Positions 3,372-41,002 of a DNA stretch of 64,000 bases are shown here, piece after piece (positions within the stretch are counted from its first letter, which is position 1; each line of letters starts with the position of its first letter). Source of the stretch: Podarcis gaigeae (taxonomy: Eukaryota); NCBI GenBank assembly GCA_964106915.2, contig OZ066917.1, one strand, 5' to 3'. The position numbers were made by a program, and so were the translations under genes. A model generated the notes under the pieces. It saw only the letters and a list, made by a program, of their open reading frames with translations, was not told where the DNA came from and did not search any database.

Positions 3372-4398
3372 TTGCATGCCAAGGCTCGGTTAGCCCCTGG
3401 TTTACCAGGGATTAAATAACTAGACAGTACACAGTATGCTGGTTTTATGGGACCAAATAATGTCACCACTTTATTGGTTATGGATGTGAAGGTTTGGCCA
3501 TAGGCATTGGGAGAAGCCACCATGAATTATGGTTATGGATGTGAAGGTTTGGCCATAGGCATTGGGAGAAGCCACCATGAATACCACTCCAGCCAGTCTG
3601 CTGGCAGTGTCTCTAAGGGTGAACCCAACCAACCTAGGACATCCTATGACCTATGTCAAATTGAGCCATCCCCTAAGTAGACCCTGTTGGAGGAGTGGGA
3701 GGGCCCTAGCCCCTGTCTGGGCATCGGACAGGAGCCACTCCTCCCAGATCCTTTTAAGAGGATACCCTTACCCATGGGGGGGGGCAGGCGGAGGCTACAA
3801 CCACCCCTCAATCCAAGATCTAAGATTACCCAATGCCTATGCACCTTATAAAGTTGTGACAATTGCTATGAGGTAGGCGAAAGACCAAATGGCTGGTGCC
3901 AGTTTGCCAAATGGGAAAAACCAACATAGTCCATAGCAAGGTTGTACCAACAGCAAAAAAACCTCTGAACTGAGGAAGCATGGGTGGGAGAACCGGTGAA
4001 GGAAGAAGTGGCTGAATGGCCTGGCAGACCGCCTTTTATCTTGGCCCTGGGTGTGTCACCACTGGGCAGTTGGCCCTGCGCCCAAGAAAATGCCCACAAG
4101 GTCCTGCTGCCATTGGCCAATTTGGCAGCAGGCAGACAATCTGGCCAGCCATTTGCTTGTACATGAGAGGGGATTGGGGCCCACCCACAAAGCTGCCCAC
4201 CATAGAAGGCAGACATATCACAGCAGTATAAAGCAAGCAGACGTATCACCTTCTCAGTGCCCAGGAAAAAACAGGACATCCCAATTTCTATTGTGAGATC
4301 TTGGCAGCCATTTTGGGTGCCACAATCTCTCATGCTCTGACACTTTTTGCGGGAGGAGAGCGAGGCACAGGTCACATGATGCACCCAGGAGTGCATCC
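3372..4398 (-). mobile_element. Non-autonomous derivative of a YR (DIRS/Ngaro-like) retrotransposon, divergent copy (element C)
   Basis: On the minus strand: 5' hairpin GATGCAC-tcctgg-GTGCATC (4378-4397), segment 3835-3920 homologous to 38175-38260, 12-bp inverted repeat 3555-3566/3829-3840, invariant CTAGGGCC, AATAAA, and terminus GGCATGCAA matching the other two copies. No coding capacity. Confidence 0.7.
3475..3582. repeat. Tandem duplication with 55-bp period inside element C
   Basis: tggttatggatgtgaaggtttggccataggcattgggagaagccaccatgaat occurs at 3475-3527 and 3530-3582. Confidence 0.95.
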
Positions 4399-7676: not shown

Positions 7677-7712
7677 GTTTGTTTGTTTGTTTGTTTGTTT
7701 GTTTGTTTGTTT
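7677..7712. repeat. (GTTT)n microsatellite
   Basis: Direct reading. Confidence 0.95.
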
Positions 7713-8993
7713 GAAAACCTCAACAGATAAAGCTTAGAAGCCCACTGTGAGTCAGGAGCAGCTTAAAAAGGCCTGGACCTGACATATAATGAAGCCCATA
7801 CTTCTCAAGAAAGGAAAATTTGCATTTTAGGGTTTCCTCTTATTTCAAAATATCTTCTACCATCTACCAAACAGTTATGAGAGTGGAGAGAGAGACCAGT
7901 GCAGAGGTTTGGGAAATGTCTCATTTTCAGCAGTGTCCACATAAGGCTAATTTTTGTTTATATCCTTTTATTATTGGCAACACTGGCGAACAGGGGTTCC
8001 GTCCTACATCTCAAATGCAATGCCGCTGTAGCAATGACTGATTGCTGAGGCTATCTTAGCTTTCTAGGACTGGTGTGTTAGGAAAACAGAACAATTATAA
8101 GAAATGGCGTAGTCACTAAGCACCAATTCATACATGTGCACCATTTCAATCTCTTGGTTTGACTTGAGATATAAGCACAACACCACATCCTGCTATGCCC
8201 TGATATTTAATGAGCCTATTCCAGACATGTTTGCTAATACAGCAACTTGAAAGTCTGAGACTTAAACTGAAATTCATTTTGTTGTTGTTGCTCTAAATAA
8301 ATATCTGCATCAGAACTGTAAGTAAAGGCAGTATATGAAAACAACAGTCTTAGGAAACAAACACTTGCATGATGGTTTCTGCAGCTGCATAGGAAGCATG
8401 TGACCCCCCCTTTTTTCCTTTCTTTTTGCTTTTCTCTTTTTGACTGACAGGTGAAAAGCAAATCCATGGAACTGCTCAGAAACTCAATATTTAGATTGAC
8501 TTTGAGCTCTCATTCCTAGAAAGTTCAAGTTCTCAGAGTTCATGCCCCTCATAGATGTGTTCAATAGAGAGTTATTCTATCACTGGCTTGGGTAATAAAA
8601 GATTAAGTGAATCAATGAGAGAGGCATTAGTCTATAGATAAAATAGCAGGCGATGTTGATGAATTCTCCCACTTTTCTTTGTTGTTTAGTTCATTGTATA
8701 ATATTACTGACTGACAGGCCATTGCTTTTTCAACAAATCCTTTTAGAAAATGTTATTCCATGTATAGCATACACATGCAAAAAACCCCACGAATGCACTA
8801 TAAGTACTGCTTGCTAAGTTCTTCACTGTGGTTTCATATGGCTGCTATTTCCCCTCTATAATGGCATACCCATTTCCCAAGACATAAATCTCATTAAATT
8901 CAATGAGATTTACTACTGAGTCAACATATATATGATTGCATAGCATATCACCCATGAAGTGCAAATTTGGAGGTTCCTACTCAGCTGTGGAGT

Positions 8994-9342
8994 GGGACGC
9001 GGGTGGCGCTGTGGGTTAAACCACAGAGCCTAGGACTTGCCGATCAGAAGGTCGGTGGTTTGAATCCCCACAACGGGGTGAGCTCCCATTGTTCGGTCCC
9101 AGCTCCTGCCAACCTAGCAGTTCGAAAGCACCTCAAAGTGCAAGTAGATAAATAGTTACCGCTCCAGCGGGAAGGTAAACGGCGTTTCCGTGCACTGCTC
9201 TGGTTCTCCAGAAGTGGCTTAGTCATGCTGGCCACATGACCCGGAAGCTGTCTGCAGACAAACACTGGCTCCCTCGGCCAATAAAGCGAGATGAGCGCCG
9301 CAACCCCAGAGTCAGTCACGACTGGATCTAATGGTTACCTTT
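8994..9342 (+). mobile_element. Sauria-type (POM-like) tRNA-derived SINE, full length, with 13-bp TSD
   Basis: GGGACGCGGGTGGCGCTGTGG head (A box), GGTTTGAATCC (B box), typical Sauria SINE body, ACCTTT tail. TSD tactcagctgtgg at 8978-8990 and 9343-9355. Confidence 0.9.
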
Positions 9343-9354
9343 TACTCAGCTGTG

Positions 9355-9705
9355 GGGACGCAGGTGAGCACTATGCCACTTGGGCTTGCCGGACAAAAGG
9401 TTGGTGGTTTGAATTCCGGCGATGGGTAAGCGCCTGTTGTTCGGTCTCAGCTCCTGCCAACCTAGCAGTTCAAAAGCACATCCAAGTGCAAGTAGATAAA
9501 TAGGTACCACTCTGGTGGGAAGGTAAACAGTGTTTCTGTGTGCTGCTCTGGTTTCACCAGAAGTGGCTTAGTAATGTTGGCCACATGACCCGGAAAAACT
9601 GTCTGCAGAAGCAGACAAACGCCAGCTCCCTTGGCCTGTAAAGCGAGATGAGCGCCGCTACCCCAGAGTCGTTCACGATTGGACTTAATTGTCAGGGGTC
9701 CCTTC
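9355..9705 (+). mobile_element. Second, more diverged Sauria-type SINE directly downstream
   Basis: Colinear with 8994-9342 over its whole length and ends in gtcaggggtccctt. Confidence 0.88.
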
Positions 9706-12700
9706 CCAGTCTTCATGTGGAGCCTCTTCACACATGCAGTTTATACAGGGACTTCAAGAGATGGGCACACAAAAATCCCAGCTTTCTGTGTGTCATGGAA
9801 GTAACCTTTGGGGACTCCTTCCTTCCTTTCTGTGAGAGCCTTACAGATAGTTCCATTTAAAACTTATCTGGTAAATAGAGTCTCATGGTTTTGATGGAAC
9901 TTAGGCCCCATCTGCACTATACATTTAAAGCAGTATCATATCACTTTAAACAGTCATGGCTTCCCCCAAAGAATCTTGGGAAATGTGGTGTGTTACAGGT
10001 GCCAAGTGCTGTTAGGAAGGGGCTTTTGGATCCCCTTTCTCTCTAGGAATCTAGTCCAGTTCATTTTAAGCCACCGAGAGAGCCAAGCTGCAGGATCAGA
10101 TCTCTCAGGATCTCTCTCAAAGCAGGAGCCAAAGAGGAAATGCCTGCTACATACACAGGTGGTGGCAGCTCAGTGACACTTCAGGTTCCCAAACAACACT
10201 GGCAATGAAAGGTGAGGCAGCAACGCAAAGAAACTGGGCAGGGACCTAAGACGTTTGGACATGGAGCAGACACTCCCCGTTGTGTGCGATGTTGCTGAGC
10301 AGCTCGTAAGAGCATGCAAAGGAGAATCTGAAGTAGGTTGCTGCTTCTTTTTCCTAAGCCAGGAGACGGAAGGATCAATAAATGAAAAAGTTGAGAAAAG
10401 ATCTGAGGGTTTGGAGGAGGAGGGGGAGGAAAGGGTTGCATTTGGGAATTTAGAACTCTACATGACAAAGTGAAAAGCTGTGATGGCTTAAGGTTTTTCG
10501 TGACGGCCCCGGCATTTTGGGGGCAGTTGGAGACTATATGATTATTGCACCATGGAATGTATCAAAAGCAACTAGTCTGCAGGCAACTCAACTGTCAATA
10601 TTGCAAAGAGAATAAATAAACATATCTAATCACACACATGCAACAGTAAACTCAGAGCAGCCCAACTTCCATAATACCCACAAACTACTGTTCACCAATG
10701 TTACTTTCTGAAAGCATTGCAGGAAGATAATATATTCTGACTTTTCTACAGCCCAGAGGAATTTAGTAGATGGCCAAGACAGGTGCTTTTCCTATAAGCT
10801 CTTTCACTAATGTCACGTTGCTGCTGCATCTAGACAGCTGATGTTATCATGCTTTGAAATTGCCTTCTTTTCACTCTAATTTATTAACGTTAATTAAAGT
10901 GAAATATTGCTGTTACCCAGTCTGATTAGCATTAATGTTACTTCTTTTTAAAAAAAGTCAGAGGCAAGATGTTGGTTTAAGGAACAGTGTCAGATAAGAA
11001 AGAGCAGATGCACAAAGTTTATTTCCTGAGGACAGTCCTTCGAGAACCTCATTCTTTCTCCTCCTTTAGAGCCAGGGGAATACAATAAATGTACTATATA
11101 TTTACCTCCTTTCACCCTGGGGATGGCTTTTAAGTATGCTCTGGTGGTGCACATGAGATAAGCCAGCTAGTACCATTCCTCCAGATATTTATCTCACAAA
11201 CCTGATCAATAAATACATTTCTCCACAAGACCTGGTCTTGTGTTTTGTCTCCAAAACATTTTTTTAACTTGCCAGTGAAGCTCAAATGGTTTGCAATAGG
11301 ATACTTGGCCACTCTTAATCTAAATTGATTGTCCGTAGAAATGTGGCAATTTAATCTGAATAGCCTCTTGCATGTCCATTATTATGTTCTTATGAATTGA
11401 GACAATCTAAAAATGCACATTAAAAAGGCAGTATAGATTTGTTTGTTTGTTTACTTATTTATGAACATTTCTAGACTGCTTTTGAACATAGACAGCATTT
11501 AAGCAAAGATTAAAAGCCATGAAAGTGAAGAAATAGGACTACAGTGTTTTAATTAAGCACTATTCAAAACCAGGCAAAACCAATGCATTTTTACTGCCTG
11601 CCTAAAAGCCCTCAGAGACAGAACTAGTGTCACTTTTTCAGGTGTGTATGTCTGTCTAGCTCCAAGACATGGGTTTGGGCAATGACTTGTACCTCCTGAA
11701 GAAACAGATCGTGTAACCCAAACCACAATCTTTACTTTGCAGGTCATATGCCATGAATCAGACATAGCAATACCCTGTTATTAGTTTCTCTCCCTTTGCA
11801 ATGTTGATGATTCACACCCACCCATCGCCCAACATATACCACCAACAGATCTTGATTCAGCTGTTGTTTGGGCTTTGTTGATAGATGCAACATATTCTAC
11901 TGTGATCATTGCAGATTAAATCACTGTAATCAAAGTCAGGGGTTGATGAGCACTCCTACCCTCCACTTTTGCCATTTGGGCTGTAAATAATCTCATTTTT
12001 GTTCTTCTCCTTGCTGAGAGGCACAACCTGTGCCAGCTAACTGTGTTTTGACTATCTTTATGAACCCATACCATAAGATCTCCGGTTTTAGTAGCATGGG
12101 AGTGAGGAACCTATTGGCTCCAGGCATCATGGCCAGATAGTCAGGGATTATTGTAGTCCAGAAACAGGGCCACAGGTTCCCTTTAGCAGGACACCAACCA
12201 GGAAAGCTTTAAAAGGAGGCTTGACAAATTTCATTGAAAATAAAGCTATCAACAGGTGCTAGGCATGATGCCTATGTGCTACCTCCAGTATCTGAGGTGG
12301 TGGTGAGCAAAAGACTATGGTGCATATGTCCGGCTTATATCCTTTCTATAGAGACCAGGTTAGCCACTTCAACTCTCCAGGGTTTGCAGAGTTGCAGAGA
12401 CCTTTACATGGTGTGAACATCTGTGCTTCTTTTGAGCTGCAATCTTACCAGGCATCCTAAGCCTGCATGAGGAAGACTTCCATCCCAGAGATGCAGCATC
12501 TCTAATAGCTTGCAGCACATTAGTTCATTCTGAAGGAGATGTTGACATTTCCTCATTTAAACAGGAGACCCTGAGGGACTTTTCTATCATCACACCCGTT
12601 AATGGTGATCTGGGTCTTAATCTGGTGCTGCAGTATCTGAATCTAGGTGGCATAAAATTGCAAATGCCTGCAGCCTTTAGTCTTGACCTTTGGGATGGAA

Positions 12701-14719
12701 CCATTTCCCTTACTTGCAACACAGGCATGATGAGGTGTTTCTTTTCTAGCACGGAAAGAAAATGGTGATTGATTAGCATAAGAGAAAAATATATCACCTG
12801 TGAATTTATGACAGGTAAGTCAGTTCCTCCTGGGTTGTTCTAATAAATCACACACTGACGATCCACCTAGCTTCTCACTGCTAACATACATTGATATTTA
12901 TCCTTTTGCTGATTCTTTTTCTCTCACTGACTCATGTTTGAACGTATTTTGTTTGCTAGTTACTACGCGATGGAGCATCAACATTTGACAGCTCTTGAAT
13001 GTTCTTCCCTGCTTTAGCGGCCAAAACTATGTTAGCAGTTTACTTCTCTGTACTGCTTTGCTTACCATTCTGTTTCAGCATTTTTCCATTCAGGTTCCAG
13101 CTCCTCAGATTGTTTCTCCTGCTACTGAAGCCTACTGCAATCCTTGGTGGACTTGAACAGGGACTGCCTCAAGTCATTCAGAAAATAGTATGATAATCCA
13201 CGTTAAGCAAATCTACTGGGAGCTTTACCTGTAAGGGGGATTGCAAAATGAATTTATGCATGTCAAATACATTCTCTGGGAGGCACTGTGATTTTAATTT
13301 TATTACAAATACATTTTAATTTTATCATTGGATTTTTATGTGTTCCACTTTTATACATCCCATAGGTGTGGTTCCCATAGGTGAAATACTTTGAGGAATG
13401 GACCATTGCATGGTTTCTCCAAAGATAGAGCTGACATTTTCGAAACTCAGTATTCCTGCTGTTTCTCAGATCATCATATATCTGCTATTTGCAATGAACA
13501 GGAGCTTCAGGAAGAAATAGCATGTTTGAAGCAGGGGGTGCTGCTGTTGGAAGGTCAGAAGCAAAATACTGCCTCTCCCCACTGGCTGCTACTGTGGAAG
13601 GGGCAAGTACAGCTGCTATTCATTGAAAAATATTTTTTCCTGTTGCTTTTTTATTGGTTTCTGTTACAGATAATTAGAAAAGGGAAATAAGTATGGAGGG
13701 GAGAGGGAGAAAACGTTTGAACTAGAATCTCCAGAAAGTGTTATAATATTGTTGAGATGCAGGTAGGTCCTTAACCAACTATTTGTTCTTCTGCTCTATA
13801 GTCTCTTTTGAGGTCCACTCTCAGTGAAGAAACCATTTTGACGTGTATAATATTATGGCAAGGAATTTGAGTCTGCTTACATTAGCATCAAAAAGACTCC
13901 ACAGTCACTCCTTTAGCGAAAGGTGGTGCTGATGAGATAGTTCTGAATATTTCACTTGGGCAGAAACACTTTATGCAACTATTCATAGACCCCTGTTCAT
14001 GTGGGAGCAAACACACCAACATTTGTTTTTTTAATCAGTTAAGGCTGCCTTGTGCATCTTCATCTGTTTCGTTTGCTCAGTCAAAGCCTCTGACAGCCAG
14101 AGCTCAGTAAAGTTTCTGTTTGGTGAATTTCCATTTGATAGCATGATTATTGCTTCTGGATTATTAGCATGGTGATTCATTGTAGCCGAGAACGAAAGGG
14201 GGGAGGGGAAACAAATCACAGTGTTGGGTGTTCTGGAACATTACTTTATTGCACAGATGCATGCAAGTTTAATTAAATGCATAGGAGTAGATGCTGACTT
14301 TGTTGTTCTTAGAGATAACTCATCAAAATCTGTGGAATTTAAATCAGTCCCATTCAGTCCAATAGGTCTGCTGTAACTCTGGAACCAACCTACTGGTTCA
14401 AGTGCAAATATATTCATCCACAAGTTTAGGCTGCAGATAAACCCATAGCAGATTCCTTTCTCCTAGATAATCCTCTATGTTCACTGAAAAGTCCTGGGGA
14501 AGCAAGGAGGACATGGAGCAGGACCTCTTTGTTACAGTGTCCCTTTTGTAACATTCAGTCCCAAGAGAAGTCTGCTTGGCTGCTGTTTGAAATCATTTGC
14601 GTGTTGAGGTCCCCAATCCACCCCCCAAAATAACTCACAACGGACACGTAATTTTTGTTTAAGATTTTTGGCATGATTTTGGCCACAGCTTTATTAAAAT
14701 ACAAACTGTGAGTGGTTGT

Positions 14720-15056
14720 TTAGGCATTGGTTAAGACTATCTGTCCCCCCGCCTGGGGACAGAACTGACTTCCGGGCACCACCGAAAGACAGTGCGGGGG
14801 AAAGCAAGTCGGGGAAGAATTGGAGCTGAGGCACAGACCCTCAACTCTCACCTGCCTGCTCCCCGAAGGCTTGCCGGCCCTAGTCCCATTCCAGGGATTG
14901 GACGAAAAGATGGCAAGCCCCAGGATTCCTTTAACGGAATTCCCTTTCCACAGCAACCATGGAGGGGCAGGCCCAGCCTATCCTGAACCCCTCCATGGAG
15001 GGGTAGGCCCAGCCTATCCTAACCCCTCCTCCACCAGATTTATAACCAATGCCTAA
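14720..15056 (-). ncRNA. Putative structured RNA/ssDNA domain in the 3' UTR of element A
   Basis: Perfect 14-bp closing inverted repeat (14720-14733/15043-15056) enclosing several hairpins that co-vary with 38253-38548 and 3555-3840. Function unknown. Confidence 0.6.
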
Positions 15057-15078
15057 CCGCCAATCGAGCCCTTTACGC

Positions 15079-15675
15079 TCACAATCCCAACAGATTCTTC
15101 AACCCTTCAATTACCGCATCCAACCAGACATCATTCCCCAGCTTGGAAAGATGTACCCCATCATTGCGGTAAAGGGCCAGAGCCTTGAAGGTAATATCCT
15201 GGTGGTAAATCACCAAACCACCCAATTCCGTTACCTTCTTGCTCACTGCGGAATTAATGCACTTCCTGGCCCTTTCAGCAGCCTTGGGTTGAGAAATGCC
15301 CTGCCAATTGCTCCTTTGCAGCAATTGTGACCAAAATATTTTAACGGTAGGTATTAAGGTCACCAACTCCCCCAAGTCTCTTTGAATCGTGGAGCGCAAA
15401 GTAGAGCATTCAACCTTTGCCATATCATTCTCCCCCAACTGCACCACAATTGCCAAAGGGGGACCATGTGAAAGCACCCTCCGTTTAATTAGTGGGATGA
15501 ATTCACTCCACCACATTCCCTGTCTGGATATCCACGACACCTGTACGTGCTGTGGGAAGCCAAGATCCGGTCCCCTTCCAGACTGCCTCGCTCTGATGCC
15601 AGCCCAGTAAACGATGCTGTGCCCCACAATCCAGATACAGACTGGAGCGAGACCTACAGGGTGGAGAACAAGCAC
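15079..15675 (-). CDS. SGNH/GDSL-family hydrolase encoded by the YR retrotransposon
   Basis: Open 198-aa frame (non-ATG start in the track) with block I IWIVGHS, block III QLGEND and block V RNDGVHLS. Confidence 0.85.
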   Translation of the reverse strand: MLVLHPVGLAPVCIWIVGHSIVYWAGIRARQSGRGPDLGFPQHVQVSWISRQGMWWSEFIPLIKRRVLSHGPPLAIVVQLGENDMAKVECSTLRSTIQRDLGELVTLIPTVKIFWSQLLQRSNWQGISQPKAAERARKCINSAVSKKVTELGGLVIYHQDITFKALALYRNDGVHLSKLGNDVWLDAVIEGLKNLLGL

Positions 15676-15692
15676 GCATCAAATACAATAAT

Positions 15693-16350
15693 TCAACATC
15701 TCTTCCGCACGTAACCCTTAAATGCATCAGACTTCCACCGGCCCAAGTCCTTAATCCTGTAGGCCGACAACCCCCAATGGGCTGCTGTTGTAGCAGCACC
15801 AATGCGAAAGGAATGGGGTGCGAAACCATAAGCCGGGACCCCACAAGCAGAAATAACCTTACGCATTACCTTGGAAAACTGATGCCATGCCAAGGGACGA
15901 CCATTTTTGTGAATGAATAGTGGACCCTCCCCTGAGGGCCTCACTGCTAAGAATTTCCTCAAATCCTTAACCGGGCAAGAACCCGGCTCCCCAGTTACGG
16001 GGAGCCTTATAACTGCCCCCCAACCCAATTGGTCCGTTTTCGAGTTATGCACCATGATTCTCACTTCCACAGGGGATAAACATACATCCTGAAGCAGCAG
16101 CCCCCTGGAACCGCCATCTCGCCTAGCCTCCATGACCACTTCCCCCACCCGTAATGCGGCAAAGAATGCAATTGAAAAGGCCGCCGAAAAAAGGCGGGCC
16201 TCATACTTGGACCAACAAAAGACCCAACTGCTTTGCTAGGGGGAGCAAGATGACCCCAACCTTCCAAGGCCTTGCGCACTACATTCCTGCCTGCTGTCCT
16301 GTGAAGGTTGGAGCCTATTCCAACCTTCTGAGACCCTGCGCACGACACAC
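15693..16350 (-). pseudogene. Tyrosine recombinase of the retrotransposon (catalytic domain open, N-terminus frameshifted)
   Basis: CWSKYEARLFSAAFSIAFFAALRVGE (catalytic R), SKTDQ, CPV, HSFRIGAAT, LGRWKSDAFKGYVR (catalytic Y). The upstream VRKALEGW lies in a different frame. Confidence 0.9.
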
Positions 16351-16599
16351 TTTTAGAAGGGTCTCTAAAAAATTAAAGCTTTACTCTAGCAGACATTGCA
16401 GCGGACTGAATTCTGATAGTTTTAACACTGCATCCGATCTGCAGCAGGTGGGCGAATTACTGCAGGTCCTGCTCAGAGGATGGGGGCAGGTTCCTCTGAA
16501 TGGCCGAGGACTGCCAGCTAAATTTTAAGAAATCAGTCCAGGCCTTCTCATAAGACCTGAAGCTCTCCAACTGAAAAAACGGGATAGAGCGACAGCAAA

Positions 16600-17891
16600 A
16601 ACATTAGATGATCCCAAAATAAAGCGAGCAGAAACACAATATTAAACCTTAAGCAGTGTGAAGACTCTGCCAGAGCATGAGGACCGTTTTGCCAGGACTC
16701 TCATACTGCCTGGTTATCAGACCAAGACAGACCCGACGGCCCCTAAACTCCTCAGTCCAGATGTGCACTGACACTACAATGGGGAAAACTTGAGAAAAGT
16801 TAGGTTACATGTGATTGCCTTGCCCTGCCAGGCTCAAGGCCACTGTACATGACGATGAAGGGACCCCGGGCCATGAGACCACCTGGCCAAGCAGGAATGG
16901 AAGGGGCAGCCTGGAGCAAAACCACCCTGCATGCAAAATTTAACTGACCTAGGAATGATAGGATCTGACAAAGCAACACTTGCTTCATAGGAAGCACTAC
17001 AAGAATAACATCCTTCAAGGCAAACAGCTTTTCCACAGGCAAGCAGATGTTTGAGCAACGGTACCCAGCTAGCCCCCAAATACGTTAAAAGGGGCAGTAG
17101 GACCCACTGTCCTCCACTGCCAACAGAACACCCAGCTCCTCAGGGAATAAAGGGGCATCTAGTAAGCTAAGCAGAGGCTGGTGTCACATGAACCAGCCAT
17201 AATCCACATAATGATACCCCCAGTTAAACGAGTCTTGACTTGCAATGTTTAATCCAGAAAGGCGCTAAAGGACTCAAGTGCTGCACAGCCTATTGAGCAA
17301 CCCACTGGCATCGCCTTATCAATATAAGGACCATCCAATTAAAGCCTAACTACTTAAAATCTTGGGGGTGAACCGGCAGCAGCCTAACAGCCGATTCAAT
17401 ATCGCATAATGCCAACAAGGCACCTCCTCCAATTTGTTGGTAAGCTCAACTGCCTGATCCAAAGATGCATATTTCACGGAACAATTCCGGAGGGATAGCA
17501 TCATTCACTGAAGTGCCTTTGGGATGCGATAAGTATGGATCAGATGGAATTATATGGGACTTTCTTAGGGACGATCCCCAAAGGGGATAAATGAAAATCG
17601 GGACTAGAAGGAGAATCAAGGGGATCCCACGATACGTCCCAATGCAAGCTGCTTCCTAACCTTCTTTCTGGCTACCACAGGTAGCTCTCTAACTGGCTTT
17701 TGAGTTACTGTATTCTGAGCCACTGGCTGAAAAGCCAGAGGAATCCCAAACCTTAGGAAAAACCCTTCCCACAAGCACAAAGCTACTGACCCATCTAGAT
17801 AACCTTTTAGCCAGACTTTCAAGGGAGATATTTTTATGGAAATATGGGTGAGAGGTATTGAGTTATTGCTTGCCAGCCCCCGCTTGGGCAA
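16600..17891 (-). pseudogene. Reverse transcriptase (/RNase H region) of the YR retrotransposon, with many stops and frameshifts
   Basis: Fragments read GIVPKK, LSHPKGTSVNDAI, CDIESAVRLLPVHPQDF, YIDKAMPVGCSIGCAALESFS and LGQLNFACRVV. The YxDD motif is degenerate. Confidence 0.85.
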
Positions 17892-17894
17892 GAT

Positions 17895-18120
17895 GCCCTG
17901 CCTTGCGTTGCCACCATGATGTGTAAATTTACAGGGCCAACACTGGCCAGAAACCCTAAAGAAGGCCCAACAAAGCTGCCACCGGGCCAGCTTCCTGCAT
18001 ACCAGCTTCAGGTTCTATTGCTCAGGGAATTTCCATTCGAAATGTGGAGCTGCGCAAGTGGTCCACATGTCCCCGTCCCTGCGATCCTAGCGAGCTAAGG
18101 GGATGATGGCAGCCCTGCGT
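17895..18120 (-). pseudogene. gag-like ORF C-terminal Cys/His zinc-finger remnant
   Basis: Minus strand reads CWAFFRVSGQCWPCKFTHH, resembling the C-W-x-F-N..C..CKF-x-H motif of DIRS/Ngaro ORF1, immediately upstream of RT. Confidence 0.55.
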
Positions 18121-18206
18121 CTAACATTCCCATCATAGTGAATTACCACTTATAGAATAGTGGGGGTTGGAAGGGACTCCGAGGATCATCTAGTCCACTT
18201 TCCCAC

Positions 18207-18207
18207 A

Positions 18208-18263
<56 letters not shown>

Positions 18264-18530
18264 CTATTTGTACCTCTGGGCAGCTTCCAACAAAATATTA
18301 AAATACAGTAATGCATCAAACAGTAAAAGCTTCTATAACAGGGCTGCCTTAGATGTCTTCTAAAAGTCTAGTAGTAGACATCTGGTGGGAGGGTGTACCA
18401 CAGGGCAGGTGCCACTTCCAAGAAGGCCCTTCACCTGGTTACCTGTAACTTGGCTTCTCACAGTGAGGGAACCACCAGAAAGGCCCTCGGCGCTGGACCT
18501 CAGTGTCCGGGTAGAGTGATGAGGGAGCAT
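18207..18530 (-). mobile_element. L2 LINE 3' fragment with (TTA)n tail nested in the gag region of element A
   Basis: Reverse-complement match to 43690-44055. Encodes HHSTRTLRSSAEGL. (AAT)n tract at 18207-18262. Confidence 0.85.
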
Positions 18531-19473
18531 GCAGCTGTCCCATACAGGGACCAATCCTGCAACCTAGGCATTACCGGCACCATACGCTGAGCAGCTGAGC
18601 TATCCAGGATGATCCCTAAAGACCTGGAACAGCCTTACCCTGACCCTTGGAGAGGTCCAAGGTGATGTCTGAATCATCATCAGAGCCCAGGGATGGTTTA
18701 CCTGCAAGGAGGTGTAAGCATCATCCCTGCTCCGCTTTTTCCTGCCTCTGAAGACGCTTCCTTCTGGAAGCAGGCACCTGGGGCATCAACAAGTCAGGAG
18801 AGGCAAGCTCTGGAGGCATCTATAAAGGCCCTGTCATAGTCTGCAAAAAGAAAAAACCTAAACAATGTGAGGAACAGGTGAAAGCAATGCTTTGTGCACC
18901 ACATGGGGATGCTATTCAGGCCAGAAATGCTGCCAGAGGCCATCAAATTCTAGGGCCAAGCGGGCCAAGCTAGGCCAGACATAAATGTTTCCAATGAGAT
19001 AACAAACTCGAGGCAGCCCACCACCTGTCCAGGTACCCCTGCTTGCCCTTTAGAGGGAAGCACCTCCTCAAGAAACCCAAAGTTCTTTTTGGGAGCAATA
19101 TCACAAATGGGCCGAACTACCCAGCAACAAATTAGTCCAAAAGGAGCAGCTTGTTTTGCTTTGTTATAACAATGGCTAAGTGGGGGATATGAAGCCTGTC
19201 TCCCAGGTCCTAGTCCTGTACTCTAGCCACTAAGCCACAATGGCTTGTCTCAAAAATGGCAGTCGCCACTATCAGGGAAAAACAAACTTGAAGAAAATAA
19301 ACTTGTTCAGAAACAGCATAGTTAAAGAGCATACAAAGAGTGCTCATTGGAGGCACAGAGAGCCTCTGGCTCCACTCTGTCTGCCTAAGATATACATTAG
19401 CAACAAGTGAGCCTGCAAACAAACAGATACATTCTTAATAGAGAGAATGAGTCACATGTCACAGAAATTTAAC

Positions 19474-19950
19474 AATTTACTGTACTGCTAACTGTAGCAC
19501 GCTTAGGCTTGAGTGATATGTGCAGGCCGAGCAGGCTGTGAAAGCCTCCATGCTTCTGCTTTCTGCCTTTTTTGTCTCATTGCAATATTAAAGGAACACA
19601 AAATAGTGCTCCTGCCCAAGGCTAGATTAAAATTCAGCCAACAGCACTGCAATCACCCAAAATAAGGCCAACCTATGAGGATACTATAAACGAAAGTGAT
19701 TCCAAGTAAGCTGGGAATTTACTGTACTGCTAACTGTAGCAGGCTTAGACCTGAATGATATGTGCAGGCCGTGAAGGCCTCCTTGCTTCTGCTCTCTGCC
19801 TTTTTGTCTCATTGCAATATTAAAGGAACTCAAAATAGTGCTCCCGCCCAAGGCTAGATTAAAATTTGGCTAACAGCACTGCACACACCCAAAATAAAGC
19901 CAACCTATGGGGACACTTATAAATGAAAGTGATTCCAGGTAAGCTGGGAA
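19474..19950. repeat. Two tandem ~240-bp units in the 5' leader of element A
   Basis: aatttactgtactgctaactgtagca...gtaagctgggaa starts at 19474 and again at 19716. Confidence 0.95.
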
Positions 19951-20865
19951 CAGCCCTGACTAGCCCCACAATTAAGCAGGCGAAAATGGGGAAAACCTTT
20001 TTGCAAAAGAAAGCCCCGAATGGGGGCTCTCTCCCTATTGGGAAAAGCAAGCAAAGGAGGATTATGCACAGGCAGTGCTCACAGGTACAGGGAGAATCTT
20101 CCCAAAGGGCAGGGTAAGGTGTGGGGTGGGAAATCAAACAGAAAAAGGGGGGAAATTAAATTAATTAAGGGACTAGAGAAGATTAAAAAGAGGGGAAAAT
20201 AAAGAAATGTAACCAGACAATGAGAAGATCGCTCCACTGTCCTCCAGACGGTCCAAGTGCTCCAGGTGATCCGTTGCACGCAGCAAAAGAGAAAGTACAA
20301 GGCTGCGTGCAGAGTATTTAAACCTTTTACCCCTCCCACCAAAATTGCAACATAACTTTTGCCCCAGCAACTCGGCAATCCAATCAATGCCCCCTGGCCA
20401 TCTTGGAGAACTTACCCAGCAACAAAGGGGTGGCTCAGTAGACCCCGCCGCAACACGTGCTCTCCCTGAAGGAGAACACGCTTTCCACCAAGAGTGAAAA
20501 CTTTACGCTTATAGAAAATACAGCAATATGAAGACTTGCCTATTTTATTTGTGTATATTGTGTGTTCAGCTACACAATATGTATTGTGAACTTGTTTTAA
20601 TCTTTGTTTTAGAAGTTAGCTTTTGCTATTATTTGGTTTTGAACTTTTCATTGACTTTTATAAGAACTTAATATTATAGGAACATTAGATACTAGGTGGT
20701 GATAGACAGGAGGTCTTGCCTCTCTGTCTACACAGATTCCACCTGCCCACACTTGTTTGGCACAGATCCTCAAGTTATAGTTAATAAATAAAATATAATC
20801 ATTTACCAAACTAGATCTGCTGAGTCTTCATTCTAGATGTGTGAGCAAAAAGGTGTCTGAGAACA

Positions 20866-35061: not shown

Positions 35062-37486
35062 TTTCTTCTTCACCGGTTTCAAAATAGATGTCCTGCAATG
35101 CTTATTCTCTCCCCAAGGGGGCGCACACTCTGCACCCTATCTGCTAACTTATTAATCACTTTGTTCCAATACACTTTTATCCGTTCAGGTTGCCACTTCT
35201 AAAATACCAGTTACTAGATGGTAATGTTATTTTAGATGGTATTTATAAACAAGGAGCACCGTAAACAGTGAACAATGAGCTATATGGGAGTCAGACAGAG
35301 GGGGTAGATATGAAGGTCAGACAAAGCAAACAAAAATTCCCTCCAACAATTTTTATCCTTATTTTCTATCTAAACTTCTAAATTTCTTTTCCTAATTACT
35401 CCAATTCAAAATTTCCCCCAGAGTTTCCCCCAGAAGGCTATGTCAATACTTAAGAGTTAAACTCCCAAAAAGGGGAACAGCAAAAAACAAAGACAAAAAA
35501 TTCTCTCCAACCACAGGAGGCGTAGAAGCATCAGAGCTGTTCTTAGAAGGAAAGAGAGTTTTTTACAAACTGGGCAGGTAGTTGTGCCCAGTCTTGGCAA
35601 CACAGCTCAATGAAGACCACACCTTTGGGGTTCCAAATACGAAGAACAGGATAACACGAAATTTTTACTTGGCTTCTATCTCCTAATGTTAATGCTAGTA
35701 TTTATATTCTTCAGCCACTTGCTGGCTTAATCCAAATTCGGGTTGTAAGAGAAGGGTGTGGAAAAGACAGGGGCAGGAACACAGATGTCTTGGCGTCCTA
35801 AAATCCTATGGAGAGTCCTAAGGGAAAAAGGAAAAGGCAAAAAACAAGAGGGGAAAAAATAAAATAAAAAATAAAAAATCAGGTATTAATATGTCCTCAA
35901 TGTTCTGGTTTTGCTTCTCTCCTTTCAAGAGCCGAAAAATCTGAGTGTCAAAGTCTTTTTATGTCTCCAGTATTCAATCAGTCAGTCAGGATGATAAATT
36001 GGCTATAAGTCTGTAAGTGCGTCCTCTCAGCTCAGGAGAAGCAAGGGAGAGAGAGAAGAAAAAAGGTCCCCATTCACTCTAATGGGAAATCTAAACATGG
36101 CTATATCTTTCCCCCCTTTTGGCTAAAGTGGATAAAAATTCTTTTGTAATTTATTTATTTCTCAAGACTTACATTTTGCTTGATTGTAATTAAATCTCAA
36201 AGCAGCTTACAAAATTTACAGGTATAGGAAAGTCTCCAGAGCAGATACAGCCTGCCAAATTGCAGACAAACAGTTTTATGTGCTTCAGGGAAGCACTTGA
36301 GAGGTACCAAAGGGATATTGTCTCTCTGATCTTGGTGCTAACCACCAATGCTCTGAGAGATAAACCCTCTGCTTCCTCTTCAAGAGCAAGGAGCTCTCAC
36401 CCTCACCCACCTGCACTTGAGTCAGGGGAAAATGCTGCATTTTACAGCTGAAAAGCATGCAGAGGGATTATTTCTGATCTCACCACTGTGGTACTTAGCA
36501 CTAAGATTAATGTTAAAATATCCCTCCACCTGTAGAGAGAGCAGGGTGAAGGGTTTGATCTCCTGAAATTGGGAAAGAAAGCAGTCTGCCTGATCTCCCA
36601 GTAAGACAGGGAAATAAAGATATGGGGGCTAGTGGGACAATTTCTATGGCTTCTGTGGTTCTTTAAGGTATATTATGGCAGAGCTGAAAACTTGCCCTAG
36701 TGCTTTTGAAAATCACATTTTGATGCTCACTGCATATTTGTTCACGTTCCCAAACTGATCAATGTTTTTGTTTTGTTTTTCATAGTCATGGATGTTTCTC
36801 ATTTCCCTTCTTTTAAGTGGCCCAGGGTCACTTGCCAAGAATGTCACGGGCTAATGGCAGCCAGGCTTTTGTCTCACTCTCCTTGACTTCATTTGCCCTT
36901 GGTCTTCATCTGATCATAGTTACATGTAGAACCAGAACATTCTCAAATGAATGCAGTTTCCTCAGAGAGTTAAGTATTCTTCAAGGCCTTAGGTGTTTAT
37001 ATTGTTCCATTGTTTTGCATTGTTTATTTCCCGCTATTAAAAAAAATAATCCCTGCTACCTTCCATGTTATTTGCTGCATTCATTTCTTTATCCCTTGTG
37101 CCTATCAAAAAAATAAAGGGGTCATAGTGTGAAGGTAGGAAAGAGTCACCCTCTGTTAACAGCTAGCCGTTGTGGACTACTAATTCCAGACAGCCCATTA
37201 TTTCATATAGCGTGTTCTCCTTCATGAAGAGCACATGTTGCGGTGGGGGCTATCAAGACACACACTGTTGCTGGGCGGGAAAGAGATTGGCCACCATTAT
37301 CACTGAGCTCTTCTTGTTGCTGGGGAGAATTATATGTTGCCATTTTGTGATTGACAGCCGTAGCCTCTTTTTGCTGCGTGCATCGGATCACCCGCCCTCC
37401 CTCCCTATTTTCAGGGTTGTTTGCTTGACCCTGCTATGCCTGTCATGGGGTCGCCTGCTTTGGGACAGGGGCCCGGTAGGAATTTT

Positions 37487-38159: not shown

Positions 38160-38252
38160 CCCGGTAGGAATTTTGTCCATTTGGCTGATTGGCTGGTGCC
38201 ATTTGGTTTTTGCCTACTACGTAGCAAATCGTCACAACTTGCAAGGTTGCGG

Positions 38253-38548
38253 TTAGGCACTGGTTTTAATTGGTTGGTGGAGGGGAATAGATTGGCTGTG
38301 CCTGCCCCTCCAAATGCTGCTGCTGCAAGGGTATTCTGTTAAAGGAATCCAGGGGCTCACCATGCTTTTGTCTGAACCCCTGCCAAGGGGCTAGGGCCAT
38401 GCAAGAGCCCTGGGAGCATTTGGGGAGAGGTGAGGCATGGTACCCAGCTCCGTCTCTCTCCCCAAAATGTTTTCCCTTTCTGACTTTGCTGGTGGGCGAA
38501 TGTCAGTCTGTCCCTGTGCGGGGTCAGATGGTCGCAACCAATGCCTAA
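38253..38548 (+). ncRNA. Putative structured RNA/ssDNA domain of element B
   Basis: Closing stem ttaggcactggtt/aaccaatgcctaa (one mismatch), with internal hairpins homologous to 14720-15056. Confidence 0.6.
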
Positions 38549-41002
38549 GCAACCACTCACATTGCTCGTAATTTTAATAAAGTTGTGGCCAAAATTATGC
38601 CAAAAACCTTAAACTAAAATCATGTGTCAATTGTGTTTTATTTGGGGGGAGGGCTGTCTTGGGGATCTCGACATGCAATCTGGACATTTTTCAAAATAAT
38701 AGGTTATATGACTGCCTATTGGTTACACAAAATGTAAGAGGGACTCAGTGAATCTTGAGTGAATAAAGCTCTGTCAATACTTGCAAATTTAAAGAGGTAA
38801 ATGTCCCTCACTTTTATTTGCATGCTTATTTCACACAGATGCAAATTTTGCAATTTATAAACCATCAACTACTCATTTTATATGACCTTTCAGGGAAGTA
38901 TTTTAATACGTTTAAGACGGTTTGTGGATCCCAGAAAGAATAATATTAATGTAACTTTTATCGGTCCTGGAAAATATATGATTCACTTTCCACAGAATAA
39001 AGCAGAACATGATTGATCATCACATAGAAAAGCTTCTGCATCCATTTGTAAACATGTGGGAGCCACTCTCGGATTTTCCATTGGATACACACAGGGTGGG
39101 GTCAGTCCACAAATGGAGGGAAGTCCACATCCTTGGGGCAAGGATGAATGGCAATAGAAGTTCAAGCAGAGATAAAATTGATTAAGATGGAAAATCAGCT
39201 TCAGCTTCAGTTTCCAGGGGTGACAGACGCAAGGCAGGAGGATGTCTCTCTAAGATCTGATTTGGGTTTCACAACGGCAGTAACTCACTGCTTTATATTT
39301 CTGTAAACTATCAGGAGCAGTTATGGAATAGCCAGTCACTTCCTCCCTTTCTACTCCTCATAATACTGCTTTAGTTGAATCTCTAAGGCTGCAGACAAGT
39401 TGGAAAGGAGATTGAAACCATTTCCTTTTTATTTTATATCATGGTCAAAAAGGAGTTCCCAGTGTTCCCAACTTCTGGAACTAATGAAAGTAATAAAAAA
39501 ATTGGAGAGGTGTAAAACTGATATTTTAGCCACTGGCCTATATTGAAACCATTTATGATTAAATGATGCTTCATTCTTGTGGACTGCAAATGAAAGCAAG
39601 AGACAGAAAAGGGGTTAAGCATGCATTCGGTCTAGCCATACTATTTCATTAGATTGGACCCTGTTTAAAATCCTGGTGAGTCCTTTGAATTTCTGTTTTA
39701 TTTGCATTTATGTGTTTTTATACTGTCATTTATTGACTTGAGATCATGTTTTTGTTTTAATATTTTATTTAATGATGTTTGTTAGTGAGATTGTATATCA
39801 CTTTGAGATTTAATTTTGAAATATGAAGCTTTTTATAAATGTATTTAAATAAAATAAAATAATAAATAAATATGTGACCCACCCTGGGAACTTTGGTAAA
39901 GTGCAAATAATAAACGTATCTAATAATACACATTGGTATTTGTGTAGAAGCTAGAGTGACCTCCTGGAACTTTTCTCACAGGGAGAGCTGCCAGTCAAAT
40001 GCCATGGAGGCTGAAGGAGAAGAGTGGAGAAGCAAGGAAAATAATAAAGAATTTCCTTCTTCTCTCTGCCCAGTCTGTCCCAGTCACTGGTGGCAAGTCT
40101 CTCCACTTGTAAAGGATATGATGGAGGGGAAAGAAACTGCACACATCTCGGCTTCTTCTTTAGTCTGTGTTCCATAATGAAAATTCACAGTTAGATTTAT
40201 TTCAGACACTAGAGCTGTGGTGTCGAAAAATCTCAAAGCAATTGGGTAATGTGAGAAACCAAGGTGAGGAGGAGAAAGCCTAACAAGGAACCTCTATTAA
40301 TGCCTGAGTCCCTTGATAACAGCAATGACAGAAGTGTAATCCTGAAGTTGACTTCAGTATCAAGTAGATTTTCAATTAAACTGCATATGGCCAGAAGACT
40401 TAGCAGTTATCATAAGGATGAGCCCAGGACAATTGCCAAAAATCTGCATACTTAAAAATACTTAATTTCGTTTCATGGGAAGAAGATCATCTGTGACAAG
40501 GGAGCAGGTGCTACAAATCAGAATTGTAAAATAATATCTTGTAGGGACAAATTATCTGCGGTATGAATTTAGTGCAAACAAGTCAAAAAGTAGCTTATTC
40601 ATGGCATTTCAGCAGCGTTTCATTATTCTAATATATGAACTGGTTTGCCAAGTGTACAGAGATTTTGCAGGCCTTGAGAAATATGATTAATTTCTAAGGA
40701 AAGGAGTCGTGGAGATCATGCCCATCTAAAAGCCACATAGTTTGGCAACAAACCAACACAAAGTTCAGCACACTTAAGTCAACTGAAATCAATAGGGTTA
40801 AGTGCCTTTAGCTGTGTGTTGGATTGTTGCCTTTAACCTGGAAACCTTGTTTTTACAATACCAGAGCTGCAGGTACAAGTTCAGAGCTGTAATTTCTTCT
40901 TCTTTATGATCTCTAATTATTAGGAATGCCGCCAAAGTGCATCCCATGTCAGAAGTCTTTTGGGTGAGTCGGTGTGTTAGAGGCCCATTTTGAAAACAAG
41001 TA

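What the first reader, a model, noticed from the sequence alone, without database searches (positions are those of the whole stretch)
14720..15056. Conserved, co-varying ~300-nt structured domain shared by three divergent YR-retroelements
Seen: elements A (14720-15056, minus), B (38253-38548, plus) and C (3555-3840, minus) each have a domain closed by a 12-14-bp inverted repeat with core TAGGCATTGG...CCAATGCCTA. In sense orientation the same series of helices occurs in the same order. H1 is GGAGGGG...CCCCTCC. H2 is ggaattcc-gttaaa-ggaatcc / gtattctgttaaaggaatcc / gtatcctcttaaaaggatc. A multi-part arm has an outer stem that differs in sequence but still pairs: ggggcttgcc/ggcaagcctt in A, gggctc..catg/catg..gagccc in B, ggaggagtgg/ccactcctcc in C. 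That stem encloses GTCYRA, an inner hairpin (tccc/ggga, cccc/gggg, gccc/gggc) and an invariant CTAGGGCC. A long arm follows (gggagcagg/cttgctttccc in A; gggagcatttggggagag/ctctccccaaaatgttttccc in B), then a last hairpin (tctgtccc/gggacaga; gccag/ctggc in C). Inference: pairing preserved despite sequence turnover implies a functional RNA or ssDNA fold needed in cis, such as an RT-binding or self-priming structure, packaging signal or ribozyme. A structured cassette bracketed by an inverted repeat next to an RT is reminiscent of retron a1/a2 architecture, but that is only an analogy. I know of no description of this fold, but cannot search.
Basis: partly seen in the sequence, partly recalled or inferred. 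Interest (0 to 1): 0.9.

Follow-up and report, generated by a model that had tools for sequence, protein, structure and literature searches.

The report
Folded RNA domain in Ngaro repeats
The three look-alike ~300-base segments are copies of the "B" terminal repeat of Ngaro-type jumping genes of lizards. The repeat keeps the same multi-hairpin RNA fold through compensating mutations, so the fold is probably needed for the element's own copying, although its exact job is unknown.

Summary
All three window segments (14721-15055 minus, 38254-38547 plus, 3556-3839 minus) are closed by TAGGCATTGG/CCAATGCCTA and hold the same series of hairpins.

**What it is.** It is not a free-standing cassette. 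It is the 5' three-quarters of the ~425-nt B repeat of Ngaro split direct repeats (A1-ORFs-B1-A2-spacer-B2). Intact Podarcis relatives carry it twice, after the SGNH-hydrolase ORF and again at the 3' end. An invariant AATAAAGTTGTGGCC follows 25-28 nt downstream. The window copies are collapsed forms: A-internal-B, and solo A-spacer-B.

**Evidence for a fold.**
- Twelve non-redundant copies from Lacertidae, an agamid and a gecko fold better than shuffles (z -2.8 to -7.9).
- A sequence-only alignment of six copies has 17 of 82 pairs with compensatory changes (8.6±2.0 in shuffles; 2-6 when partners are slid).
- Covariance-model alignments of each half agree.
- G·U outnumbers A·C 31:12, which points to the sense strand.
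- The closure is longer than reported. In B1 an outer helix pairs the hydrolase stop-codon region with the 3' flank and co-varies in five lineages.

**Known matches.** No Rfam, tRNA or literature match was found.

**Function.** Untested. It is most likely a cis-acting RNA platform for reverse transcription or strand transfer; a role in 3'-end processing is the main rival.

The parts
14721..15055 (-). Structured domain, copy A (arm to arm), inside the single B repeat of a collapsed Ngaro element
   Evidence: Sequence; fold z -5.85; covariance models R1 E 6.6e-31 and R2 E 8.5e-39
15046..15055 (-). 5' arm of closing helix P1 (TAGGCATTGG), copy A
   Evidence: pairs with 14721-14730, mean pair probability 0.88 in a +-150-nt context
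14721..14730 (-). 3' arm of P1 (CCAATGCCTA), copy A
15078..15083 (-). Decayed remnant of the 5' strand of outer helix P0 (TGTGAG), overlapping the hydrolase stop codon 15079-15081
   Evidence: Sequence; homologous to the 11-15-bp P0 of intact relatives
14707..14712 (-). Remnant of the 3' strand of P0 (CTCACA), copy A
14681..14695 (-). AATAAAGCTGTGGCC: poly(A)-signal-like 15-mer, invariant as AATAAAGTTGTGGCC in most copies and all lineages found
14596..15061 (-). Whole B repeat of element A; the element ends with ...CAACACGCAAA
   Evidence: Homology to L001 B1/B2; terminus
15082..15678 (-). SGNH/GDSL hydrolase ORF of element A (last ORF before B)
   Evidence: (Podarcis and Phrynocephalus SGNH hydrolase hits, E 3e-68)
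15693..16148 (-). Tyrosine-recombinase ORF fragment of element A
   Evidence: Pfam Phage_integrase, E 3.9e-4, below the curated cut-off; the intact homologue in L001 hits Phage_integrase and Phage_int_SAM_4 weakly, also below cut-off
20266..20485 (-). A1 repeat of element A; starts AAAGCGTGTT and holds a TTTAAATA TATA-like box
   Evidence: blastn to L001 A1; sequence
38254..38547 (+). Structured domain, copy B (in a B2-type repeat 38249-38678)
   Evidence: R1 E 4.9e-35, R2 E 2.5e-31
38231..38240 (+). Spacer 10-mer GTCACAACTT, predicted to pair with 38580-38589 (closing helix extended in the B2 context)
   Evidence: Pair probabilities 0.91-1.0; motif conserved in all spacer-bearing copies
38576..38590 (+). 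AATAAAGTTGTGGCC; its AAGTTGTGGC (38580-38589) is the partner of the spacer 10-mer
37209..37391 (+). A repeat of the solo A-spacer-B unit that holds copy B. The spacer is 37392-37486 and 38156-38248, split by a ~670-bp insertion flanked by duplicated CCCGGTAGGAATTTT
   Evidence: the abundant unrelated repeat ends at 38155
3556..3839 (-). Structured domain, copy C (divergent family, B2-type; spacer 3843-3919 upstream)
   Evidence: R1 E 8.6e-8; spacer homology
3462..3475 (-). AATAAAGTGGTGAC, the variant 3' motif of copy C; the spacer 10-mer partner lies at 3851-3860

Best explanation
The ~290-340-nt domain is the folded core of the B repeat of Ngaro-type tyrosine-recombinase retrotransposons of squamates. 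These elements are built A1-gag/RT-YR-SGNH hydrolase-B1-A2-spacer-B2. The domain runs from about 5 nt inside the 5' edge of B to about 25 nt before an invariant AAUAAAGUUGUGGCC. It is therefore present in the element's RNA once internally (B1, just after the last stop codon) and once at the 3' end (B2). On the sense strand it forms a multi-branch fold. A 12-22-bp closing helix P1 (the 'inverted repeat') encloses five to six hairpin arms. Flanking sequence lengthens the closure: in B1 by helix P0, which includes the hydrolase stop codon, and in B2 probably by the spacer. SHOWN: the identity as the B repeat; the excess thermodynamic stability; the covariation within Lacertidae; the co-variation of P0 across lacertids, an agamid and a gecko; the bias toward G.U; and the lack of any known RNA-family match. 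INFERRED: it acts in cis in the RNA during replication. The part of B upstream of the poly(A) site is the only sequence shared by the RNA's 3' end (B2) and an internal site (B1). I therefore think it most likely serves as the structured 3'-terminal platform where the element's RT is recruited or cDNA synthesis starts. It would also be the R-like region for the B2/B1 strand transfer or annealing that regenerates full ends. This is analogous to R2/LINE 3'UTR folds and to structured retroviral R regions. My confidence by layer is ~0.9 for the identity, ~0.85 for a selected sense-strand fold, and ~0.35-0.4 for this particular function.
For: Identity: in intact Podarcis elements the domain lies in direct repeats B1/B2 (98.8-99.5% identical), with A1=A2. 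The ORFs hit RT, tyrosine recombinase (weak Pfam hits below the curated cut-off) and SGNH hydrolase (also below cut-off in Pfam, but E 3e-68 to named SGNH hydrolases). Fold: z -2.8 to -7.9 in 12 copies. The closing stem has probability >=0.88 in 10 of 13 copies within +-150 nt. Covariation: alignment A3 (MAFFT only) has 91% of cells paired and 17 pairs with double changes, against 8.6+-2.0 in shuffles (0/500) and 2-6 when slid. The 5' half (12 rows, four families) has 21 of 33 pairs, against 7.2+-2.0 and 4-6 slid. The 3' half has 15 of 36, against 7.0+-1.8 and 1-6 slid. The model built on one family finds three other families (E 5e-9 to 4e-3). P1 changes: A-U to U-A in the arm core in Zootoca; U-A to G-C next to the core; different extensions in the agamid, the gecko and L002d. 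P0: matched flanks total -109.9 kcal/mol, against a derangement mean of -75.7; this is the best of 120 permutations, and P0 appears in MFE folds. Strand: G.U 31 vs A.C 12 at Watson-Crick-majority pairs; alifold -89.6 (sense) vs -74.6 (antisense). Open question it bears on: the primer of DIRS-order reverse transcription is unknown, and a 3' hairpin has been proposed for DIRS-1 (PMC7192593).
Against: There are no functional data. RNA reads from a related organism give only low depth on the conserved flanks and about zero on the interior, with no defined ends. Transcription limits, poly(A) site use and even expression are therefore unproven. Homology alone (B1=B2) would suffice for strand transfer, so the fold needs some further role that I cannot identify. 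The covariance-model alignments are fitted to the structure, and the A3 structure was derived from the same alignment, which inflates the counts somewhat. Only 12-13 copies were available, some of them decayed fossils. Helix-by-helix homology could not be shown for the gecko and the agamid. The antisense strand also folds well.
Confidence: 0.6

Rival explanations
1. The fold is a post-transcriptional element rather than a replication element. It would govern 3'-end formation or poly(A)-site choice between the identical signals in B1 and B2, or RNA export or stability. For example, it could bring the last stop codon close to the poly(A) tail by looping out ~300 nt, as in structure-mediated juxtaposition in HTLV-1 RexRE or NMD evasion.
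For: The domain ends 25-28 nt before an invariant AAUAAA-containing 15-mer. P0 puts the hydrolase stop codon in the closing helix, so the folded 3'UTR is effectively short. The two contexts close differently: the ORF end in B1, and the spacer 10-mer pairing with AAGUUGUGGC next to AAUAAA in B2. That difference could distinguish the two poly(A) sites. The bias is toward the sense strand.
Against: The poly(A) sites are not mapped. The B2-specific pairing involves two invariant motifs, so it has no covariation support. The adjacent GGUUGC/GCAACC pairing is not significant in a permutation check. A GU-rich block directly abutting AAUAAA is not the usual poly(A)-site layout.
Confidence: 0.25
2. The conserved features act at the DNA level. 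The two arms would be inverted binding sites for the tyrosine recombinase or an accessory protein, or the segment would be a promoter/enhancer or a cruciform within the repeat. On this reading the hairpins are by-products.
For: The 10-bp arm cores are nearly invariant while the interior diverges, as expected for protein-binding sites. A matched change in both arms (Zootoca) also fits two sites read by one protein. The domain lies ~120 bp from the palindromic B/A junction AACACGC-AAA-GCGTGTT, the likely crossover site.
Against: Covariation is spread over all internal helices, not only the arms. The G.U over A.C asymmetry (31 vs 12) and the better sense-strand energy indicate one folding strand. 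The arms bear no resemblance to the junction palindrome. P0 pairs coding sequence with the 3' flank using family-specific sequences, which a double-stranded DNA binding-site model does not predict.
Confidence: 0.07
3. The domain is a self-cleaving ribozyme or a precursor of small RNAs (for example a hairpin-derived miRNA or piRNA trigger).
For: There are conserved unpaired motifs (GUUAAA loop, CUAGGGCC, GUCYRA) in a multi-helix junction. The long arm resembles a pre-miRNA-like hairpin. Other retroelement classes do carry ribozymes.
Against: No ribozyme or miRNA family was found, even at E<=10. The CUGA-like motif is not conserved among families. RNA reads show no discrete ends.
Confidence: 0.04
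4. No selected fold exists. The helices would be chance products of a G+C-rich, G-run/C-run-rich repeat, and the apparent covariation would come from relatedness and alignment fitting.
For: The sequence is 51-64% G+C with G and C runs. The antisense strand also scores well. Shuffle controls ignore phylogeny, and two of the three alignments were fitted to the structure.
Against: Dinucleotide-preserving shuffles are beaten in all 12 copies. The slid-partner controls, which keep relatedness, give 2-6 compensatory pairs against 15-21 observed. Helices are kept with different sequences in four lacertid families. P0 and P1 are kept with different sequences in the agamid and the gecko.
Confidence: 0.04

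Closest known systems
Ngaro split direct repeats (A1-[ORFs]-B1A2B2; Goodwin & Poulter 2004, as summarised in PMC9210276, PMC8547959, PMC7192593)
   Same: The domain lies inside the B repeat. Intact Podarcis relatives show A1=A2 and B1=B2, with RT, YR and SGNH-hydrolase ORFs. Collapsed forms such as solo A-spacer-B occur, as reported for Cafeteria Ngaro elements.
   Different: The papers I could search describe the repeats only as repeats. None mentions a conserved, covarying secondary structure, the arm motif, the AATAAAGTTGTGGCC block, or helices linking B to the hydrolase stop codon or to the spacer.
DIRS-1 internal complementary region and the proposed 3' priming hairpin (PMC7192593)
   Same: Same order of elements. 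Both are cis-acting sequences near the 3' end needed to rebuild full ends from a shorter RNA. The primer of reverse transcription is unknown in both.
   Different: The ICR is complementary to the element's termini. Here the arms are complementary to each other, not to the termini (AAAGCGTGTT... / ...CAACACGCAAA). The DIRS-1 hairpin is 14 nt, whereas this is a ~300-nt multi-helix domain.
3'UTR folds of non-LTR retrotransposons recognised by their RT (R2 3'UTR; stem-loops of stringent-type LINEs) - from general knowledge
   Same: A structured RNA of a few hundred nt at the 3' end of the template. The structure is conserved while the sequence drifts. The location is just upstream of the 3' end.
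   Different: Those elements prime on nicked target DNA. Ngaro has no endonuclease and integrates with a tyrosine recombinase. Here the fold is duplicated internally (B1). No binding data exist.
Structured retroviral R regions and 3' elements (HIV-1 TAR and poly(A) hairpins; HTLV-1 RexRE bridging AAUAAA and the cleavage site) - from general knowledge
   Same: Repeated terminal sequence present at two places in the RNA. It is folded, adjacent to a poly(A) signal whose use must differ between the two copies, and involved in strand transfer.
   Different: The repeat geometry differs (internal + 3', not 5' + 3'). There is no sequence or Rfam similarity.
Retron msr/msd with a1/a2 inverted repeats
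   Same: An inverted repeat closes a structured non-coding segment in an RT-encoding element.
   Different: The retron ncRNA precedes a bacterial RT gene and primes from a branching G. Here the segment follows all ORFs, is a terminal repeat of a eukaryotic element, and lies kilobases from the RT. No defining retron feature is met.

Membership tests
Ngaro (DIRS-order YR retrotransposon) | Split direct repeats A1-[ORFs]-B1-A2-B2 | tested here: met
   Met in the intact relatives L001 and L002 that carry the same domain. The window copies themselves are collapsed: A-internal-B (14596-20485) and solo A-spacer-B (37209-38678).
Ngaro (DIRS-order YR retrotransposon) | Reverse transcriptase plus tyrosine recombinase ORFs | tested here: met
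   L001: RVT_1 E 6.2e-10 (above cut-off); Phage_integrase and Phage_int_SAM_4 E 1e-4 (weak, below the curated cut-off). Window element A: weak Phage_integrase, E 3.9e-4.
Ngaro (DIRS-order YR retrotransposon) | Extra SGNH-hydrolase ORF after YR (vertebrate Ngaro) and no methyltransferase domain | tested here: met
   The hydrolase ORF matches proteins named SGNH hydrolase and Lipase_GDSL_2 (below cut-off). No methyltransferase hit appeared in the same Pfam scans.
Any Rfam 15 family (ribozymes, miRNAs, cis-regulatory RNAs, tRNA) | Covariance-model score at or above the gathering threshold | tested here: not met
   No hits at gathering threshold in the window. None at E<=1 over the whole intact element. 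Only two chance-level hits at E 4-6 in copy A. ARAGORN found no tRNA.
DIRS internal complementary region | Complementarity to the outer ends of the element's terminal repeats | tested here: not met
   The arms pair with each other. The termini are AAAGCGTGTT... and ...CAACACGCAAA, which are unrelated to the arm sequence.
Retron msr-msd | ncRNA bracketed by a1/a2 immediately upstream of its RT gene; priming from a conserved branching G | tested here: not met
   The domain lies downstream of all ORFs and ~2-4 kb from the RT domain. Branching cannot be tested with these tools.
RT-recognised 3'UTR fold (R2/LINE type; a functional class) | Specific binding by the element's RT and a requirement for cDNA initiation | not testable with these tools
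   Only position and structural conservation could be shown.

The most novel reading that the evidence does not exclude
The B-repeat fold is the missing initiation device of tyrosine-recombinase retrotransposons: a structured platform at the RNA's 3' end on which the RT starts cDNA synthesis, by self-priming or protein/RNA-primed. Its two context-specific closures would act as a switch. Ribosomes terminating at the hydrolase stop codon melt P0 in B1, whereas the untranslated spacer locks B2. Only the 3' copy would then be competent for initiation, and the internal copy would serve as acceptor or template for end repair.
Probability: 0.15. Interest if true: 0.8.

Novelty: new member of a known kind. 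Interest (0 to 1): 0.58.

Why it matters
How DIRS-order (tyrosine-recombinase) retrotransposons start reverse transcription and rebuild their ends is still open. The one experimental system, DIRS-1, has no identified primer (PMC7192593). A ~300-nt RNA domain sits exactly in the sequence shared by the RNA's 3' end and an internal site, and its pairing is kept across lizard families that diverged deep in squamate history. It gives a concrete, mutable target for testing that step. It is also a candidate new RNA family for Rfam and for TE annotation. Finally, it explains why decayed copies in this genome look as if they fit neither Ngaro nor DIRS termini.

Tried and rejected
- The half models did not recognise the gecko or agamid interiors in the right register. 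I therefore claim only P0/P1 and general foldedness there.
- Five look-ups gave no Ngaro DNA. Three proteins were not on record. The Gekko multi-SGNH genes and a Garra gene are host genes with about 25-33% identity and no domain downstream.
- mafft-qinsi was unavailable.
- Ribozyme and tRNA-like origin were rejected on Rfam and ARAGORN.
- The GGAATTCC of hairpin 2 looks like a kappaB-type site (from memory). That sequence is not kept in other families, whereas the pairing is.
- Complementarity between the transcribed end of A and the sequence after the 3' motif appeared in one Podarcis fold but not in L004a, so I dropped it.
- B2-specific GGUUGC/GCAACC pairing: the matched assignment is only marginally best by hand comparison of the matrix, so it is not claimed.
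- RNA-seq laying at >=82% identity was uninformative about transcript ends.
- No coding potential: close copies differ by 1-2-nt indels.
- Complex prediction and structure tools were not relevant.

Full report
**Observation.**
They are more stable than dinucleotide shuffles, with z -5.85, -3.30 and -2.46. Copy A has a 38-nt internal duplication of the first hairpin. Copy C has a 55-bp tandem duplication that repeats the 3' arm.

**What the segments belong to.**
- The ORF that ends 23 nt upstream of copy A (15082-15678, minus) is an SGNH/GDSL hydrolase. Its best relatives are lacertid and agamid proteins (E 3e-68).
- The next ORF upstream has a weak tyrosine-recombinase hit.
- I fetched DNA around homologous proteins. 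Two intact Podarcis elements (L001, L002) carry the domain twice, about 810 bp apart, as part of 424-428-bp direct repeats (98.8% and 99.5% identical). A second pair of ~210-bp repeats lies at the 5' end and between the two copies.
- This is the canonical Ngaro architecture A1-[ORFs]-B1-A2-B2 (PMC9210276, PMC8547959).
- L001 encodes a zinc-finger/RT ORF, a tyrosine-recombinase ORF (weak Pfam hits below the curated cut-off) and the hydrolase ORF.
- B starts about 5 nt before the 5' arm, and the domain fills its first ~300 nt. An invariant AATAAAGTTGTGGCC follows 25-28 nt after the 3' arm.
- B ends ...CAACACGCAAA and abuts A (AAAGCGTGTT...). Together they form the palindrome AACACGC-AAA-GCGTGTT, presumably the recombinase crossover site.
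- A carries a TATA-like TTTAAATA about 50 nt before its 3' edge.
- A conserved ~175-nt spacer separates A2 from B2.

**The window copies are collapsed forms.**
- Element A is A1 (20485-20266)-internal-B (15061-14596) and ends with CAACACGCAAA. It has no A2 or B2.
- Copy B sits in a solo A-spacer-B unit (37209-38678). Its spacer is split by a ~670-bp insertion flanked by a 15-bp duplication.
- Copy C is a spacer-B2 fragment.
- Recombination between B1 and B2, or between A1 and A2, would give exactly these forms. Solo AB units are reported for Cafeteria Ngaro (PMC8547959).

**Copies compared.**
I analysed 12 non-redundant copies. They are the three in the window; six from Podarcis (L001, L002 x3, L004 x2); and one each from Zootoca (L009), Phrynocephalus (L003) and Eublepharis (L007). 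A 13th, divergent copy (L002:40094-39850) was found late.

**Is the fold real?**
- Stability: all 12 copies fold better than shuffles, z -2.8 to -7.9. The closing helix has pair probability >=0.88 in 10 of 13 contexts of +-150 nt. The exceptions have a duplicated arm nearby.
- Sequence-only alignment: a MAFFT alignment of six copies of one family (72-80% identical) gives an 82-pair consensus with 91% of cells paired. Seventeen pairs have changes on both sides, against 8.6+-2.0 in shuffles (0/500) and 2-6 when partners are slid by 1-3 columns.
- Half models: two half-domain covariance models built from that family find three further lacertid families (E 5e-9, 9e-8, 2e-5, 4e-3 for the 5' half).
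- On those alignments, 21 of 33 pairs (5' half) and 15 of 36 pairs (3' half) show compensatory changes. Shuffles give about 7 (0/500) and the slid controls give 1-6.
- Caveats: these alignments are fitted to the structure, the A3 structure was derived from A3 itself, and the sample is small.
- The models do not align the gecko or agamid interiors. Helix-level homology there is unproven, although both are strongly folded.

**Closing helix.**
The 10-bp arm core hardly varies, but where it varies it does so on both sides.
- Zootoca has TAGGCTTTGG/CCAAAGCCTA.
- The pair next to the core is U-A in seven copies, G-C in two and A-U in one.
- The agamid, the gecko and L002d extend the helix with unrelated complementary sequences.

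**The closure is longer than the finding.**
- In the B1 context, the last codons and the stop codon of the hydrolase ORF pair with the 11-15 nt just after the 3' arm. A small hairpin lies between this outer helix (P0) and P1.
- The sequences differ by lineage yet stay complementary in Podarcis (two families), Zootoca, Phrynocephalus and Eublepharis.
- Matched flanks total -109.9 kcal/mol, against -75.7 on average for mismatched assignments. The matched assignment is the best of 120 permutations. P0 appears in the MFE folds of three lineages.
- In the B2 context, the spacer 10-mer GUCACAACUU is complementary (one G.U) to AAGUUGUGGC inside the invariant 15-mer. It is predicted to pair in three of four copies. 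Both motifs are invariant, so this rests on complementarity only.

**Strand.**
At pairs whose majority is Watson-Crick, minority cells are G.U 31 times and A.C 12 times. That is roughly p 0.004 by my own binomial arithmetic. The consensus energy is -89.6 on the sense strand and -74.6 on the antisense strand. This favours the sense strand, meaning RNA or plus-strand DNA.

**Known families.**
- Rfam gives nothing at gathering threshold in the window and nothing at E<=1 over the intact element. It gives only chance-level hits in copy A.
- ARAGORN finds no tRNA-like gene.
- Full-text searches for Ngaro with RNA structure terms found no description. Repbase could not be searched.

**Expression.**
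RNA reads from a related organism were laid at >=82% identity on 37700-38900. Depth was low on the spacer, the arms and the 3' motif, and about zero on the divergent interior. One library showed a modest excess of the orientation expected for sense RNA, and no read-end pile-ups appeared. This neither supports nor refutes transcription limits. One DNA contig lacks the domain (joint 38241>38520).

**How it most likely works.**
- Shown: position, duplication, fold, covariation and strand bias.
- Inferred: the start site lies in A, from the TATA-like box. The 3' end lies shortly after AAUAAA in B2. If so, the RNA lacks most of A1 and the end of B2, and must regain them from the internal B1-A2 junction, as the ICR does for DIRS-1 (PMC7192593).
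- The part of B upstream of the poly(A) site, which is essentially this domain, is then the only sequence shared by the RNA's 3' end and an internal site. It is an R-like region.
- Homology alone would serve strand transfer, so selection on pairing implies a further role. I favour recognition by the RT or initiation of cDNA synthesis at the 3' copy (about 0.35-0.4).
- Control of 3'-end formation, export or stability is the main rival (0.25).
- DNA-level binding sites, a ribozyme or small-RNA precursor, and no function at all are minor rivals.

**Comparison and novelty.**
It works like the RT-recognised 3'UTR folds of R2/LINEs and like structured retroviral R regions. It is a member of none of them, and the retron analogy fails on every defining feature. 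I rate it a new structured RNA family inside a known repeat of a known element class.

**Limits.**
The only consensus lines were those the alignment tools printed for the non-coding domain. The N run at 7224-7474 was left untouched.

Noticed in passing
window 30214-33966 (-) and 34005-34709 (-): Apparently intact LINE ORF2 (1250 aa) with endonuclease and RT domains, with a 234-aa ORF just upstream. A candidate young non-LTR element.
   Followed up: partly
window 37487-38155: A ~670-bp insertion splits the Ngaro spacer and is flanked by duplicated CCCGGTAGGAATTTT. Its 37740-38155 part is a very abundant repeat in DNA contigs, is well covered by RNA reads on both strands, and resembles 30479-30615.
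   Followed up: partly
L001:12690-12712 (also window 14596 and 20485 termini): The B/A junction forms the perfect palindrome AACACGC-AAA-GCGTGTT. Element ends are AAAGCGTGTT... and ...CAACACGCAAA, so this is the likely tyrosine-recombinase crossover site with an AAA core.
   Followed up: partly
window 38231-38240 with 38580-38589; 3851-3860 with 3462-3471 (minus): The invariant spacer 10-mer GTCACAACTT is complementary to AAGTTGTGGC inside the invariant AATAAAGTTGTGGCC. This pairing is possible only for the B2 copy.
   Followed up: partly
L001:7626-12252: The three ORFs of the intact Podarcis Ngaro element abut (7626-10757, 10760-11641, 11647-12252). By my own frame arithmetic each is shifted by -1 relative to the previous one, which hints at frameshifting or reinitiation.
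   Followed up: no
window 38241-38520 (DNA contig of run X15): One genomic contig joins 38241 to 38520, a relative that lacks almost exactly the folded domain.
   Followed up: no
window 3475-3582 (-): A perfect 53-55-bp tandem duplication in copy C repeats the 3' arm and its flank, giving two alternative partners for the 5' arm.
   Followed up: partly
window 15049-15053 / 14723-14729 and equivalents: The 7-bp core of the arms (GCATTGG/CCAATGC) is, from memory only, the same as the acceptor stem of vertebrate tRNA-Gly(GCC). ARAGORN and Rfam see no tRNA-like fold. Unverified, and possibly chance.
   Followed up: partly
L005, L006 (Gekko), L008 (Garra): Host genes with several tandem SGNH-hydrolase domains (about 25-33% identical to the Ngaro hydrolase) and no Ngaro repeats. 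Possible domesticated or unrelated paralogues.
   Followed up: no
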